A DNA stretch of 63,530 nt, the filler included, from Octopus bimaculoides (lineage: Eukaryota), in the NCBI RefSeq assembly GCF_001194135.2. It is 4 parts of 4 records of this genome, joined end to end, with 100 filler letters (N's around TTAATTAATTAA, not from the genome) between each part and the next. Parts side by side here need not be neighbours in the genome. Positions count along the whole stretch, not along the records: positions 1 to 26,557 come from NC_068996.1; 3 more parts are not named here. One strand, 5' to 3'. Under the pieces are notes generated by a model that searched no databases, was not told the origin of the DNA, and was given only the letters and a program-made list of their open reading frames with translations. Shown here one piece after another: positions 3,245-20,269 of the stretch. The position numbers and the translations under genes were made by a program. How positions within the stretch are numbered: the stretch's first letter is position 1; each line of letters opens with the position of its first letter.

Positions 3245-4124
3245 CTGTTCAGATTAATTATATTTTATAAAATAAATTATATTCCATTACATTATGTAAA
3301 TGTGTTTCTTTATTGGCCACAAGAAACATTAATCAGAGAAATAGTGATGCCAATGAAATTGATAGTCCAGTATATGACTGGTACTGCAAATACTAATATC
3401 GGAACAAGAAAATGATGAAGTTGACTCTAACAGTATCTGAACATGCTAAGCCAGTAGGTTTGTAACTACGCAAACTCCAGTCTACTGCATTTACCCTATT
3501 GCTTCCTAACTTCATTGCATTAACAATTGGCAAATAGCCAATTAATAAAGTATTAAAAAAAACCAAAAAAAAAACCGGTCAGCATCATAATGACGACCCA
3601 TTTTTTCAGAGTTAGGGGAAGAGTACGACACTAGAATGTTGAAGTACAGCATAAGCTAATTGAAAATCACTGTAGTAAGAAATCTATTTCTGTTCTGTCC
3701 ATTGGAGAAACAACAACAGCAACAATAAAAATAGGAATAAGCTGGAGGAAGGGGAGAAATGGTGATGATGATATAATTATATTAATAATGATAATAATAA
3801 TTAGAAAAACAAATAAGGAAAAATATCGACCGATATATTCATTCACTCATTCTTGATTTGAATTGATGCAAAGAAAGGGTTGTTAGGAGGAGGGGAGATG
3901 GAGATGGGAATGTCAGTTTCCAATCATTGAACTTTCATACATATCTCAGCCATCTGCCATACTTCATTTGATCAGTAGCCTAGCCTATGTGTGTGTGTGT
4001 GTGTGTGCATGTGTGCGCACACATGTGATTATATAAGGTTGTATATATATATATNNNNNNNNNNTATATATATAAATTTATATGTATGTATACATATATG
4101 TGTCTTTTGTTTTCTGTAATTTTG

Positions 4125-5901: not shown

Positions 5902-6329
5902 CAGTAGTTTTATTTTTATAACGTGCTTTCACTTCACTACCGAGCGCAGCTCTGTGCGCCTTGGGTATGTGCTGTGGTTTGCTGTGGTGCTCTTATGTTT
6001 ACTGTATTGAAAGTGTTTTGTGTAGAATGTGTGCAGTACCCAGTAGTGCAATTTTCTGTATGTTATATATATTTGTAAGTCCTGGTGTTTTTGTTATGTA
6101 TTTGTCTGAATACTTTTTTATTATACCTAAGGCACCTACTATGATAGGAATTGTTTCTGTTTTTAGATTCCACATTCGAGTTATCTCTATTTCCAGGTCT
6201 TTGTATTTTGAAAGTTTTTCCATTTCTTTTAGAGAAACGTTGTCATCTGCTGGTATTGATACATCAATTAGAAAGCATTTTTTTTCTTCATGATCTTTGA
6301 CAACTATATCTGGTCTATTTGCCTTAATT
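5902..6329 (-). mobile_element. 5'-truncated R4/Dong-clade non-LTR retrotransposon (restriction-like endonuclease C-terminus + 3' UTR)
   Basis: KANRPDIVVKDHEEKKCFLIDVSIP...KLSKYKDLEIEI..MW..KTETIPIIVGALG is the PD-(D/E)xK RLE signature; stop at 5999, about 100-nt 3' UTR with a GCGCA/TGCGC stem (5944-5959); (AAT)n on both flanks. Confidence 0.85.
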
Positions 6330-6349
6330 TTATTATTATTATTATTATT

Positions 6350-6570
6350 AAGGTGGTGAGTTGGCAGAACTGTTAGTACACGGGGAAAAATGCTTAGCAG
6401 CATTTCATCCATCTTTACATTCTGAGTTCAAATTCTGCCAGGGTCGACTTTACCTTTCATCCTTCTGAGGTTGATAAAATGATAAAATAAGTACCAGTCA
6501 AGCACTGGGATCTATGTAAACAACTAAGCCCCTTCCCTGAAATCACTCGCCTTGTACCAAAATTCGAAAT
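6350..6570 (+). mobile_element. SINE family A copy
   Basis: AAGGTGGTGAGTTGGCAGAACTGTTAG...GAGTTCAAATTC...GGTCGACTTTACCTTTCATCC; (ATT)n on both sides. Confidence 0.85.
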
Positions 6571-8545: not shown

Positions 8546-8905
8546 AACATCTTTTATCTTTTGTTTCAGTCATTAAACTGTGGTCATGCTGGGGCACCAG
8601 CTTGAAGAAATTTTAGTTGAATGAATTAACTCCAAAACTTATTTTTTAAGGCCCATTAGTTATTCTATAAGTGTCTTTTGCCAGACTATGTTACAGAGAT
8701 GTAAACACACCAACATCAAGCAATGGTGGGGGATAAACACAAACACACAACATGTTTCTCTCAGTTTCTGTCTACCAAATCCATTCACAAAGTTTTGGTT
8801 GGCTCAAGGCTACAGTAGAAGTCACTTGCCCAAGGTACCATGTAGTGCGACTGAACCCAGAACCATGTGGCTGGGAAGCAAACTTCTTACCACACAGCCA
8901 CACTT
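8546..8905 (-). mobile_element. Composite SINE family B/C (head + internal simple repeat + body)
   Basis: TTTATCTTTTGTTTCAGTCATT...CTGGGGCACC...CAAACACACAAC...CCCAAGGTACCATGTAGTGCGACTGAACCCAGAACCATGTGG...CTTACCACACAGCCAC. Confidence 0.8.
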
Positions 8906-9060
8906 GCACCTACAATACATGTTTTCATTAAAAACTGCAAGCTGTGATTTGTGTAATTTGGTTGCTATTTCTGCACAAAATTTGAGAGGAAGAGTTTCTT
9001 TTTTATCGATAATTTATTTCTAATATAATTATAATGATTTGAACACGTAGTAGTAATAAT

Positions 9061-17543: not shown

Positions 17544-17601
17544 CTTTCTAATGGTTCTAAGACCAATTTCTTCACAGAATCACCCTCTATTTCTTCTTGC
17601 T
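17544..17601 (-). CDS. Candidate exon of gene A ((E)QEEIEGDSVKKLVLEPLE, phase 1-2)
   Basis: Strong acceptor tatttctatttttcag|, donor AAG|GTAATT, 58 nt, only one open frame. Confidence 0.55.
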
Positions 17602-17986
17602 CTGAAAAATAGAAATATAGAGCTTTTAAGTTTATAAACAAATTGGTTTATATAAAATTGCAGCAATTTTAAGCTTAAAAAGTAATATGAACTGTAAAAT
17701 TTCAAGTTTCATAAATTATTTTAGAAAAACAGAAAAAATTTAAAAAATTTATTTTATATAAACAAGGCACAAGCATGGATGGGTGATTAAGAAACTTGGT
17801 TTACAACCACTTTGTTTCAGGTTCAGTTCTACTGTGTGGCACCTTAGCAAGTGTCATCAGCTATAGGGGGTTCCTATAAGGTTGTTATCCACCCCTGATT
17901 GGAACTCTCCCGTATGACATGTACGCATGCTCAGTGACTTGCTTTAACTTCCGCAGACGATTCACATACTGTACTAACCGGTTAAT

Positions 17987-18265
17987 ATGTTTCCAAAGAA
18001 ATCACGCAAATACTGCTTTATATGCAGCCACTATAGAGGGAAGAATGTAGACGGCAAAGTTATTTCACTACATAGATATCCTGCAAATGTAGCTATTCGT
18101 CGTATTTGGCTTCAGAGATCGAGACTTGTGAGGAAAGACTTTGTTTACACTGCAAATAGCCAAATGTGTCCCCAGCATTTCGTCAATTTTAATGGACCAT
18201 CGAAAGATCACCCCTTGCCATCCATTTTTCCAAACAAAATATTTAAAATATCAGTAAGTGCATGA
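17987..18265 (+). CDS. THAP zinc-finger domain (first exon of a transposase-like ORF1)
   Basis: YCFIC...ISLHRYP...IW...MCPQHF...LPSIFP is the C2CH THAP pattern; consensus donor CA|GTAAGT at 18254 directly after the domain. Confidence 0.85.
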   Translation: MFPKKSRKYCFICSHYRGKNVDGKVISLHRYPANVAIRRIWLQRSRLVRKDFVYTANSQMCPQHFVNFNGPSKDHPLPSIFPNKIFKISVSA

Positions 18266-18752
18266 TCATATATACGCAGTTAGTAGATGAGTGAAATGTC
18301 TCATTGATTTATCTCCTCACTAACCGATTAGAACATGTTAAAATTCAAGAGAGAAACAAATTCGAGTGGTGTACGTCGGGCTAAACACGAATGTTTAATC
18401 TAATAATTGTTGTGTTGATGTACAGGTATTTTTAATAAAGAATTTTGCATTCAAATAATAAATACATTGAAATTGTTGTTAATGTTCTGAATGAATGTGA
18501 AAATTTCGAGTAAGCCTAGCTATGATATTTTTCTTTATATATATATATATATATATTTATTAATAAGGATAGAAATTGATATTAATCAATTAGAACCAGT
18601 GGTCTAGCATATTAAAAAAATCCGAAGATTAAAATTATATTACATACAAAAATAAGAGGAATGACCAGCAAAAGTGGACTCCTATATGCTAGAAATAGAT
18701 GCCGATTCGGCACTTTTGCTGGTCATTCGTCTTATTTTTGTGTGTATATATA

Positions 18753-18790
<38 letters not shown>

Positions 18791-18881
18791 ATTAAATAAT
18801 AAATTTACAGCATTGAATCTAATATTCCTCTAATTATTAGACTTTATANNNNNNNNNNACAGCATTGAATCTAATATTCCT

Positions 18882-19194
18882 CTAATTATTAGACTTTATA
18901 GTGTGACTGTCCCTACCTCTTCTACACCTTATCATGCTCATGGCCAAATCAGTGAATGGTTGCTGAAAGCAGATAGGGATCAGGCAATACTTCTGCTTAT
19001 TCCTGTCTGAAGTATCGTCCGATGAATTTACTTTGTTGACATTCTTCATCGACAGAATTTTTATACCTTTCAAACCTTTCAATCAAGTCCGTCTTTCTTC
19101 CAGTAACATACTGTCCATATAATCTTAAATATTTCTTTAACTCAGGCACAGTAAGTACTTCGATAGCTGAATCATTGAGCTGCTTTATATCCAT
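18882..19194 (-). pseudogene. SAP-domain ORF2 N-terminus, frameshifted
   Basis: LTVPELKKYLRLYGQYVTGRKTDLIER is the SAP motif; removing one T near 19072 restores ...LIERLKGIKILSMKNVNK..., joining ORFs 18997-19194 and 18882-19082. Confidence 0.75.
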
Positions 19195-20269
19195 GATAAG
19201 ATGTAAAACAATAACAATAGCGTAGATAGTCTGCGGAAGTTTAATTGTCTACATAGAGCGCTGCCTAGCCAAGGGAGATAACCTACTTATAGGAAAGCCC
19301 TATAGCCCCAGACCAAGGAAAGCCTTGTGAGTAGATTTTTCAGACAGAAACTGAAAGAAGCCCTTCATGTGTGTGAGAGAGTGTGTGTGAACTGGGGATC
19401 TCCATGTTTTGACATCACATGATAGTTATAAATGAATGTCTCAGTCATACAAAAAATGTCCATTTTCAATCTTCTGTGAAAACATGTCTTGTCAAGGGGA
19501 AACATTACCATACTTGGAACCAGGTGAGGGTTGGTGACAGGAAGGGCATCTACCTCAACAAATTTCGTCCAATCCATGTAAGCATGGACAAATGGACATT
19601 AAAATAATGATTATGCTGATGGTGATGCAAAAATCTAGATCAGTATTAATTGGAATCTTCTGGATTGTTCTTTACACCAGATTCAGAAGCACTATGGTAA
19701 AATACATTCCAGTTATGACTATTCGATTTGTTTTTCCATTTCCAGGTGCAGTATATCTAGGACTACATTACCCAATTTTTTTTTTTACTTTTAAGAGGGT
19801 AAAAATGCAATTTGAAGAAATGTAGCTGTTTTCATTATAATTCATGCAACTACATAAGGACTTGTCACTAGTTGGAACACTCTTGATACTGTTTAACGCA
19901 AGGATGAGACAAGATGAAGAATTATGTTCAAAGATATTCCAACCATGATGATTCCATCTTTTTCACAAATACAATGTATACAGGACTGCATATTATTTAA
20001 TACATCCTTCTTTTTCTAAGATATGAGGGAAATTTTGGTGCTATTTTTTAACAAAAACTAATAGCAGTAAATGATAACATTCCAATCACTATGTGGTAGT
20101 CAGGGTGTGATATGAGGGAAGTTTAGTTGCTATTTCTAGCAACACTAAATAAAAATCAACATGCACCAGTCATATCATCTTGACAAGGAATCTTGGAATT
20201 GTATGAAGATAATGGAGGTAGTGAAGGATCATGTTGGTGGCTTTTGTTTTTATATTGGAGTTAGTGACC

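What the first reader, a model, noticed from the sequence alone, without database searches (positions are those of the whole stretch)
17862..19304. Young two-gene DNA transposon with convergent THAP and SAP ORFs, inserted into a SINE
Seen: 24-bp imperfect TIRs (19/24) and a clean pre-insertion site (the host SINE rejoins at ...CTATA|GCC). A THAP ORF starts 121 bp inside the left TIR and ends at a GTAAGT donor; a SAP ORF starts 106 bp inside the right TIR on the opposite strand. Both DNA-binding N-termini survive while no catalytic domain is visible. Known: ISL2EU (PIF/Harbinger-related PHIS group) elements encode a THAP-DDE transposase plus a second YqaJ lambda-exonuclease ORF and make AT duplications; some Kolobok elements are similar but use TTAA. 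Inference: this is a deletion derivative of a possibly uncatalogued cephalopod two-component transposon, and the retained THAP could act as a TIR-binding repressor or be exonisable. Retained CpGs in a CpG-eroded gene body imply recent activity.
Basis: partly seen in the sequence, partly recalled or inferred. Interest (0 to 1): 0.8.

Follow-up and report, generated by a model that had tools for sequence, protein, structure and literature searches.

The report
Truncated ISL2EU-type transposon in an octopus SINE
This is a short, gutted copy of a known kind of cut-and-paste "jumping gene" (ISL2EU type) that landed in an older repeat of an octopus-like genome. It keeps both ends and the first exon of each of its two genes but has lost the enzyme parts, so it is an ordinary, if neatly preserved, genomic parasite.

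Summary
17866-19300 is bounded by imperfect inverted ends (19/24; 30 nt at 83%) and flanked by TATA on both sides. A THAP reading frame (17987-18253) ends at a GTAAGT donor. A convergent SAP reading frame starts at 19194 on the minus strand. Joining the flanks restores a SINE-like repeat without a gap. The N10 gap sits between two exact 42-nt copies, so it is probably an unmerged contig overlap, and no reading frame crosses it.

Relatives settle the identity. In the mussel Sinanodonta woodiana, elements of 4.3-4.6 kb have homologous left and right ends, also flanked by TATA. The same THAP exon (70% aa) there continues into an HTH_Tnp_4 + DDE_Tnp_4 transposase. The convergent gene is SAP-SWIM-YqaJ. 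That is the ISL2EU (PHIS/Harbinger-like) architecture.

The window copy is therefore a non-autonomous internal-deletion derivative. Its second-gene exon carries a +1 frameshift and further indels. At least 24 short proteins predicted in Octopus bimaculoides come from sister copies; no octopus transposase core turned up.

The duplication reads as AT inside a TATA target (canonical) or as a 4-bp TATA, and these copies cannot separate the two. High CpG (o/e 0.74 vs 0.25) supports "younger than its surroundings", not current activity.

Verdict: a new member of a known kind, of modest interest.

The parts
17765..17861 (.). Left half of the host SINE-like repeat (tRNA-like head)
   Evidence: Together with 19305-19400 it matches a second copy at 8756-8906(-) at 70% over 152 nt. 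ARAGORN finds no tRNA in the window.
17862..17865 (.). Left TATA flank: target-site duplication, either a 4-bp TATA or an AT core at 17863-17864
   Evidence: The same TATA lies at 19301-19304, while the paralogous repeat has a single CT(A/G)TAG there. Mussel copies are flanked the same way.
17866..17889 (+). Left terminal inverted repeat GGGGGTTCCTATAAGGTTGTTATC
   Evidence: Homologous to the left ends of the Sinanodonta elements.
17890..17986 (+). Left subterminal, promoter-like region: CCCCTGATTGGAACTCTCC, ACGCATGC (17923-17930), AACTTCCGCAGAC (17946-17958)
   Evidence: These blocks are conserved with the mussel and Logan relatives. Reading them as NRF1-like and ETS-like sites is inference from known motifs. 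An O. bimaculoides model (P0137) translates through 17883-17972 at 90%.
17987..18253 (+). Exon 1 of the transposase gene: intact THAP zinc finger (C10, C13, C61, H64), 89 codons
   Evidence: Pfam THAP 26.4 bits. 70% identical to the N-terminus of the 507-aa THAP-HTH-DDE transposase P0017, with all invariant columns kept. 82-96% identical to O. bimaculoides proteins.
18254..18259 (+). GTAAGT splice donor at the conserved exon-1 boundary
   Evidence: The boundary falls at the same codon in Sinanodonta (GTGAGT) and in L002 (GTTAGT). A 334-nt GT..AG intron present in L002 is absent from the otherwise 94-97% identical L004.
18260..18976 (.). Internal AT-rich filler where about 3 kb (HTH-DDE, SWIM-YqaJ) is missing. 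Contains (TA)n 18536-18560, a hairpin 18641-18746, (TG)n 18759-18787, and N10 at 18849-18858 between 42-nt duplicates
   Evidence: No protein or DNA similarity to the full relatives or to the rest of the window. Repeats.
18977..19194 (-). Decayed 5' part of the second gene (SAP domain at about 19063-19158), with a +1 frameshift at 19072-19074 and further indels
   Evidence: Pfam SAP 29.3 bits. Matches residues 4-57 of the SAP-SWIM-YqaJ protein P0016 in two frames. O. bimaculoides copies read through as ...ERLKGIKILSMKNVNKV.... 9-bp tandem.
19195..19276 (-). Right subterminal, promoter-like region with GTCTGCGGAAGTT (19229-19241)
   Evidence: (I9). O. bimaculoides models P0015 and P0144 translate through it.
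19277..19300 (-). Right terminal inverted repeat GATAACCTACTTATAGGAAAGCCC
   Evidence: It resembles the right ends of the mussel elements more than its own left end.
19301..19304 (.). Right TATA flank (duplicate of 17862-17865)
19305..19400 (.). Right half of the host SINE-like repeat, ending in a (TG)n tail

Best explanation
The feature is a non-autonomous internal-deletion derivative of an ISL2EU-type DNA transposon (PHIS / Harbinger-like superfamily) in an octopus-like genome.

The full element, seen in a freshwater mussel, is about 4.3-4.6 kb. Its ends begin GGG. Two convergent genes are each read inward from a subterminal promoter-like region. Gene 1 is a THAP-HTH-DDE transposase. Gene 2 is a SAP-SWIM-YqaJ exonuclease-like protein.

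The window copy keeps both ends, both subterminal regions and the first exon of each gene. It lacks the catalytic parts. It could therefore only have moved when a full element supplied transposase in trans (inferred). It inserted by cut-and-paste into a TATA inside an older SINE-like repeat, duplicating AT or TATA (shown by the empty-site comparison).

An internal deletion of this kind is the usual outcome of interrupted gap repair after excision (inferred from P element and Ac/Ds biology; not shown here). Today the copy is most likely inert: gene 2 is frameshifted, and the THAP exon is still open but has no downstream exons.
For: Ends, THAP, SAP and donor confirmed.

Sinanodonta locus L003 has TATA|GGGCATTCCAATAAGG...GGAATGCCC|TATA. 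Its gene P0017 scores THAP 30.5, HTH_Tnp_4 52.7 and DDE_Tnp_4 148.8 bits. Its convergent gene P0016 scores SAP 25, SWIM 17.5 (below the 19.6 cut-off) and YqaJ 67 bits. A second, decayed copy, L001, has the same layout.

The octopus left end aligns with the mussel left ends and the octopus right end with the mussel right ends.

The window THAP exon is 70% identical to P0017 and keeps every invariant column. The window SAP exon matches P0016 residues 4-57.

The same THAP-HTH-DDE plus SAP-YqaJ pairing recurs in Pinctada, Saccostrea, Argopecten and Logan/ENA contigs.

Published definition of ISL2EU: a THAP+HTH+DDE transposase plus a YqaJ second ORF, AT duplication, ends usually starting GG, about 4.8 kb, animals only (PMC4482050; PMC4122938).

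No DDE or YqaJ remnant in the window. Empty site restored.
Against: No full-length octopus copy was recovered. The THAP and SAP searches returned only short octopus proteins (63-144 aa), and no octopus entry appeared among the 120 hits listed (of 232) for the DDE/YqaJ query. The autonomous partner is therefore inferred from bivalves.

The deletion reading assumes that the N10 gap hides nothing. The deletion breakpoints could not be mapped.

The duplication looks like TATA relative to GGG...CCC ends, which is not the textbook A|AT|T pattern.

Placement of the transposase inside the ISL2EU clade rests on domain architecture and on similarity to an Acropora digitifera THAP-DDE protein (P0121), not on a tree with reference sequences.
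Confidence: 0.88

Rival explanations
1. The copy is really full-length or much longer. The assembly gap at 18849-18858 hides the catalytic exons, and the apparent 1.4-kb element is an assembly artefact.
For: Gap length is only estimated. The gap lies exactly in the region where the missing coding sequence would be.
Against: Exact 42-nt duplicates on both sides of N10 point to overlapping contig ends. About 590 bp after the donor and about 120 bp before the gap carry no exon-2 or SWIM homology. The second gene is already frameshifted and stops in all frames before the gap. Many O. bimaculoides sister models are equally short.
Confidence: 0.07
2. The short element is not mere debris. It is kept or spread because it expresses a THAP-only protein that binds the family's ends and damps transposition (like the KP repressor of the P element), or because its exon 1 is spliced into host transcripts.
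For: The THAP frame is open with all zinc ligands and invariant residues. The promoter-like motifs and the conserved donor are intact. An O. bimaculoides sister copy has the same 92-codon frame (P0136). CpG is retained.
Against: There are no expression data. The sister copies differ by 4-18% at the protein level and several are disrupted, which looks neutral. An 89-codon frame surviving in a fairly young copy is not unusual. No acceptor or downstream exon was identified.
Confidence: 0.1
3. It belongs to another THAP-bearing transposon class (Kolobok or P element) or to PIF/Harbinger proper or Spy, not ISL2EU.
Against: [quoted passage not shown] The flanks are TATA/AT: not TTAA, not 8 bp, not TWA, and not the TSD-less AAA|TTT of Spy.
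Confidence: 0.02
4. It is a pair of small host genes (THAP and SAP proteins) that happens to lie between inverted repeats.
For: UniProt lists the O. bimaculoides relatives as THAP-type and SAP domain-containing proteins.
Against: There are many diverged copies per genome. The ends are homologous to those of bona fide mussel transposons. The unit sits inside a SINE-like repeat with a restored empty site. One of the two frames is frameshifted.
Confidence: 0.01

Closest known systems
ISL2EU group of the PHIS (PIF/Harbinger-ISL2EU-Spy) superfamily, e.g. the Crassostrea gigas and Acropora digitifera families listed in Han et al. 2015 (PMC4482050)
   Same: Full relatives have a THAP+HTH_Tnp_4+DDE_Tnp_4 transposase and a second, YqaJ-bearing gene. 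They are 4.3-4.6 kb, animal-only, with short inverted ends starting GG and an AT-only target with an AT core.
   Different: The flanks read T-AT-A (TATA) rather than A-AT-T. Relative to the GGG...CCC ends the net duplication is 4 bp, unless the ends are taken as AGG...CCT. The second gene starts with a SAP domain and has a SWIM-like finger, which the papers read here do not mention. The window copy itself lacks both catalytic parts.
Non-autonomous internal-deletion derivatives of cut-and-paste transposons (Ds of Ac, KP and other deleted P elements)
   Same: Both ends and the 5' coding parts are kept and the catalytic core is lost. Mobility is presumably in trans. KP likewise retains only the THAP DNA-binding part.
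   Different: A different superfamily. No evidence here of repressor activity or of mobilisation.
PIF/Harbinger elements
   Same: A related DDE_Tnp_4 transposase, a two-gene organisation, and an AT-rich target.
   Different: Harbinger has a 3-bp TWA duplication and a Myb/SANT second gene, and its transposase has no THAP. None of these applies here.
Kolobok
   Same: Some members have a THAP domain at the transposase N-terminus.
   Different: TTAA target and an unrelated catalytic core. Not seen in the homologous full elements.

Membership tests
ISL2EU (PHIS superfamily) | Transposase with an IS5/Harbinger-type DDE domain (DDE_Tnp_4) plus HTH and an N-terminal THAP | tested here: met
   Met in full relatives that share ends and exon 1 with the window copy: P0017 scores THAP 30.5, HTH_Tnp_4 52.7 and DDE_Tnp_4 148.8 bits (alignment). 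The window copy retains only the THAP exon.
ISL2EU (PHIS superfamily) | Second ORF encoding a YqaJ exonuclease-domain protein | tested here: met
   P0016, P0018, P0108 and the L004 second ORF score YqaJ 57-81 bits, each with an N-terminal SAP. The window keeps only the SAP exon, matching P0016 residues 4-57.
ISL2EU (PHIS superfamily) | 2-bp AT target-site duplication (target A|AT|T) | tested here: inconclusive
   Five of the six ends examined (octopus, L001, L003) are flanked by TATA and one by TATT. The empty site has one TATA. The data fit AT with ends A...T, or a 4-bp TATA. The oyster relative L022 reads aaaAT|TCCCC...GGGGA|ATcac, which favours AT. The flanking bases are T/A, not the A/T of Han et al..
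ISL2EU (PHIS superfamily) | Short inverted ends usually starting GG | tested here: met
   GGGGG... / ...GCCC next to the TATA. GGGC in Sinanodonta. The oyster and Logan relatives instead start (T)CCCC.
ISL2EU (PHIS superfamily) | Transposase falls in the ISL2EU clade in a DDE phylogeny, separate from PIF/Harbinger, Spy, Pangu and Nuwa | not tested
   No reference ISL2EU, Harbinger or Spy sequences (Repbase) were available. The only indirect support is an E of 1e-52 to an Acropora digitifera THAP-HTH-DDE protein (P0121), a species with a catalogued ISL2EU family.
PIF/Harbinger | 3-bp TWA duplication and a Myb/SANT second ORF | tested here: not met
   Flanks are TATA/AT. The second ORF is SAP-SWIM-YqaJ.
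Kolobok | TTAA target duplication and a Kolobok-type transposase | tested here: not met
   No TTAA at either junction. Full relatives carry DDE_Tnp_4.
Spy | No duplication, insertion between AAA and TTT, single ORF without a zinc finger | tested here: not met
   A net 4-bp gain at the filled site, two ORFs, and THAP present.

The most novel reading that the evidence does not exclude
The octopus/unionid lineage may be a distinct ISL2EU subgroup that makes a true 4-bp TATA duplication and whose accessory nuclease is tethered to DNA by a SAP domain. The abundant octopus mini-elements would then express a THAP-only protein that acts as a KP-like repressor of the family, or donates a THAP exon to host transcripts.
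Probability: 0.1. Interest if true: 0.45.

Novelty: new member of a known kind. Interest (0 to 1): 0.25.

Why it matters
It adds a cephalopod representative to the ISL2EU group; none appears in the 2015 survey table read here. It shows that both element ends, the subterminal promoter-like blocks and the exon-1 boundary have been conserved between an octopus and a unionid mussel, even though synonymous sites are saturated. Practically, it explains a set of at least 24 'THAP-type' and 'SAP domain-containing' orphan proteins in the O. bimaculoides proteome as transposon first exons. It also documents that the poorly understood YqaJ accessory protein of these elements begins with a SAP DNA-binding module. 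None of this changes how such elements are thought to work.

Tried and rejected
1. Octopus DNA copies. Exact-protein look-ups of an O. bimaculoides model (P0009) and of the window's own THAP frame found no contig. Termini and duplications of sister copies therefore could not be read.

2. Metagenome scan. The degenerate end pattern GGGNNTTCCNATAAGGTTGTT gave 15 hits, none followed by the family's subterminal blocks, so all are chance.

3. Catalytic remnants. tblastx and blastn of the full mussel element against the window found only the THAP exon and the two ends.

4. Origin of the internal 720 bp. It matches nothing else in the window or in the fetched loci.

5. Rfam on 17600-19600 gave only sub-threshold miRNA-model hits on the hairpin. 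ARAGORN found no tRNA.

6. Recent horizontal transfer between octopus and mussel. Rejected: pS 0.83 (saturated) and pN 0.185 for the THAP exon.

7. End mismatches as a sign of age. Rejected: the left/right asymmetry is shared with the mussel elements.

8. Acropora locus L021. No clear inverted ends were found around the gene, so it gave no duplication information.

9. Literature. No paper in the held library holds both ISL2EU and octopus. Searches for SAP/SWIM/YqaJ transposon descriptions and for mollusc ISL2EU surveys gave nothing useful.

10. Pfam on other long frames of the window gave nothing.
Full report
**1. What is in the sequence**

Positions 17866-19300 are bounded by GGGGGTTCCTATAAGGTTGTTATC on the left and its imperfect reverse complement GATAACCTACTTATAGGAAAGCCC on the right.
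- The repeat finder pairs 17860-17889 with 19277-19306 (30 nt, 83%).
- A 20-nt end pattern with up to three mismatches occurs only at these two places, with none in 100 shuffles.
- A second, subterminal inverted block (AACTTCCGCAGAC) lies 80 and 59 nt inside the ends.
- Both ends are flanked by TATA.

The reading frames are as described, with one correction.
- The plus-strand frame 17987-18265 passes Pfam's THAP threshold (26.4 vs 23.9 bits).
- The minus-strand frame 18997-19194 passes the SAP threshold (29.3 vs 23.9 bits).
- GTAAGT follows codon 89 of the THAP frame at 18254-18259.

**2. The assembly gap**

N10 at 18849-18858 is flanked by two exact 42-nt copies, 18807-18848 and 18859-18900 (D3).
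- This is what two overlapping contig ends look like when they are placed side by side without merging.
- The most likely true sequence has one 42-mer and no gap, giving an element of about 1383 bp.
- The gap lies in non-coding filler. The THAP frame ends 580 bp to its left, and the extended second-gene frame stops at 18882, before reaching it.
- Only reads can prove continuity. I keep a 7% rival that sequence is hidden there.

**3. The insertion site**

The flanks belong to a dispersed SINE-like repeat, and a second copy lies at 8756-8906 on the other strand.
- The flanks joined with one TATA align to that copy without any gap across the junction: CAGCTATAGCCCC against CTACTGTAGCCTT.
- The element plus four bases is therefore an insertion into an older repeat.
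- This rests on a single paralogue.

**4. What it is**

Protein searches with the two short frames found only short O. bimaculoides proteins (63-144 aa). These are annotated as THAP-type or SAP domain-containing and are 65-96% identical to the window frames. The THAP search also found a THAP protein of the unionid mussel Sinanodonta woodiana at 71%, plus two Logan proteins.

The first mussel locus (L001) holds a 4.3-kb element.
- Its ends (TATTGGGCATTCCAATAGG... / ...GGAATGCCCTATA) are homologous to the octopus ends.
- The THAP exon is followed by HTH_Tnp_4 and DDE_Tnp_4 coding sequence.
- On the opposite strand, reading inward from the other end, lie a decayed SAP, a SWIM-like finger and a YqaJ domain.

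A search with those pieces recovered an intact pair of adjacent mussel genes.
- P0017 (507 aa) scores THAP 30.5, HTH_Tnp_4 52.7 and DDE_Tnp_4 148.8 bits.
- P0016 (565 aa) scores SAP 25, SWIM 17.5 (below the cut-off) and YqaJ 67 bits.
- That copy (L003, 4562 bp) is flanked TATA|GGGC...GCCC|TATA.

An alignment of all ends shows a left/right correspondence between the two animals.
- The octopus left end resembles the mussel left ends. Shared blocks are CCCC(T)nATTGGAACTCT, (G/A)CGCATGC and ACTTCCGC.
- The octopus right end resembles the mussel right ends, which lack a 21-nt block.
- So the five mismatches between the two octopus ends are mostly an inherited asymmetry, not decay.

The same two-gene pairing recurs in Pinctada, Argopecten, Saccostrea and several unnamed contigs.

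This architecture is the published definition of ISL2EU within the PHIS superfamily (PMC4482050; PMC4122938; PMC9179366):
- a THAP+HTH+DDE transposase plus a YqaJ second ORF;
- ends usually starting GG;
- about 4.8 kb;
- animals only.

**5. State of the window copy**

tblastx of the full mussel element against the window finds only the THAP exon and the ends, and no DDE, SWIM or YqaJ.

*THAP exon*
- It is open, keeps C10, C13, C61 and H64, and keeps every column that is invariant across 14 family members.
- By eye it differs at about 5 of 92 positions from the pattern of the O. bimaculoides copies.

*Second-gene exon*
- Sister copies read ...DLTERLKGIKILSMKNVNKVNSSDD....
- The window reads ...DLIERFERYKNS... 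and continues the correct sequence in the next frame.
- The cause is one extra T in the run at 19072-19074, inside a perfect 9-bp tandem.
- Further on, short deletions remove KSEVSD and LISPLG, and homology fades near 18977.

*Interior*
- The 720-bp interior holds (TA)n, (TG)n and a strong hairpin. It matches nothing else that was fetched.

The copy is thus a non-autonomous deletion derivative. Its breakpoints cannot be placed without a full octopus copy, and none was found. No octopus entry appeared among the 120 listed DDE/YqaJ hits.

**6. Target-site duplication**

Relative to GGG...CCC ends, the filled site has TATA twice and the empty site has it once.
- The same sequences can be read as T-AT-[AGGG...CCCT]-AT-A, that is, the canonical 2-bp AT duplication inside a TATA target.
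- All three copies examined (octopus, two mussel) fit both readings. One mussel copy has TATT on one side.
- In the oyster relative L022 the junctions are aaaAT|TCCCC...GGGGA|ATcac. Here AT/AT is perfect, whereas the four-base reading (AATT vs AATC) needs a mismatch. By homology this favours AT.
- The bases outside AT are T and A in the octopus/mussel lineage. In the published moth example they are A and T.
- I score this defining feature as inconclusive but compatible.

**7. Age**

Evidence for a relatively recent insertion:
- CpG observed/expected is 0.74 over the element, and 0.67-0.82 in each of its three parts.
- The rest of the window gives 0.25. Windows of equal size there give mean 0.245, sd 0.095, maximum 0.457.
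- The insertion is therefore clearly younger than the surrounding CpG decay, or is protected from methylation. The flanking TATA is also perfect.

Evidence against current activity:
- The second-gene exon has already taken several indels.
- Microsatellites sit inside the element.
- Sister proteins differ by 4-18%.

Between octopus and mussel the THAP exon shows saturated synonymous change (pS 0.83) and pN 0.185. This indicates old divergence under purifying selection in the active lineages, not recent horizontal transfer.

**8. Mechanism**

*Shown*
- Two-ended structure, insertion with a duplicated AT/TATA, and loss of the catalytic parts.
- Homology to elements that encode a DDE transposase and a YqaJ protein.

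*Inferred*
- Mobilisation in trans by a THAP-HTH-DDE transposase that recognises the shared ends.
- Origin of the deletion by interrupted repair after excision.
- Promoter function of the conserved ACTTCCG(C/G) and GCGCATGC blocks, which resemble ETS-type and NRF1-type sites (from general knowledge).
- Use of the conserved donor. The support is that a 334-nt GT..AG intron sits at exactly this boundary in one Logan contig and is absent from a 94-97% identical contig carrying both intact genes.

The idea that the THAP-only product represses the family, as KP does for the P element, is possible but untested.

**9. Verdict**

The element is a new (cephalopod) member of a known transposon group, not a new kind of element. 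The points of some interest are these:
- conservation of both ends between an octopus and a mussel;
- the SAP module at the start of the YqaJ protein;
- the TATA context of the duplication;
- the explanation of a family of orphan octopus 'genes'.

Interest 0.25.

Noticed in passing
window 18641-18746: A near-perfect hairpin (36-nt arms, 94% complementary, 34-nt loop) inside the element's filler. The RNA fold is -56.7 kcal/mol with z = -10.7. It occurs once in the window and matches no Rfam family at threshold. It could be a tiny nested foldback element or a repair product.
   Followed up: partly
L025 3680-3710 (ENA ERZ26168041, 16.8-kb contig whose name ends in _c): The right and left ends of a related element abut head-to-head around a single TATA (...GAAACGTGC TATA GCACGATTC...). 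The SAP/YqaJ gene reads leftwards and the THAP gene rightwards. This is either two tandem copies sharing one target or a joined-ends (circle-like) junction.
   Followed up: partly
L002 406-739 versus L004 437-438: Two Logan contigs of one oyster-like family, 94-97% identical. One has a 334-nt GT..AG intron at the THAP exon boundary. The other has no introns and carries both genes open (523 aa, and at least 571 aa).
   Followed up: partly
L022 4884-10660 (Saccostrea cucullata): A 5.8-kb relative with ends TCCCCATTTTCAAAAG.../...CTTTTGAAAATGGGGA flanked by AT on both sides. The terminal GGG of the octopus/mussel lineage is CCCC here, while the subterminal blocks stay conserved.
   Followed up: partly
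window 17923-17958 and 19229-19241; L001, L003, L004, L022, L025 subterminal regions: ACTTCCG(C/G) near both ends, and (G/A)CGCATGC(G) near the left end only, are conserved across octopus, mussel, oyster and unnamed relatives. They look like ETS-type and NRF1-type promoter sites for the two inward-reading genes.
   Followed up: partly
window 8756-8906 (-) and 2414-2440: A second, diverged copy (70%) and a fragment of the same SINE-like repeat that hosts the insertion.
   Followed up: yes
window 5999-6412 (-): An open 137-codon frame (...NRPDIVVKDHEEKKCFLIDVSIPADDN...ALGII...) with no Pfam match. From memory it resembles the C-terminal tail of some retroelement polyproteins; this was not tested.
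   Followed up: no
window about 22900-23500, and short N runs near 4040 and 14510: Further assembly gaps, one of about 600 N, and many (TG)n/(TA)n microsatellites between 10 and 16 kb. These are typical of a draft, repeat-rich assembly.
   Followed up: no
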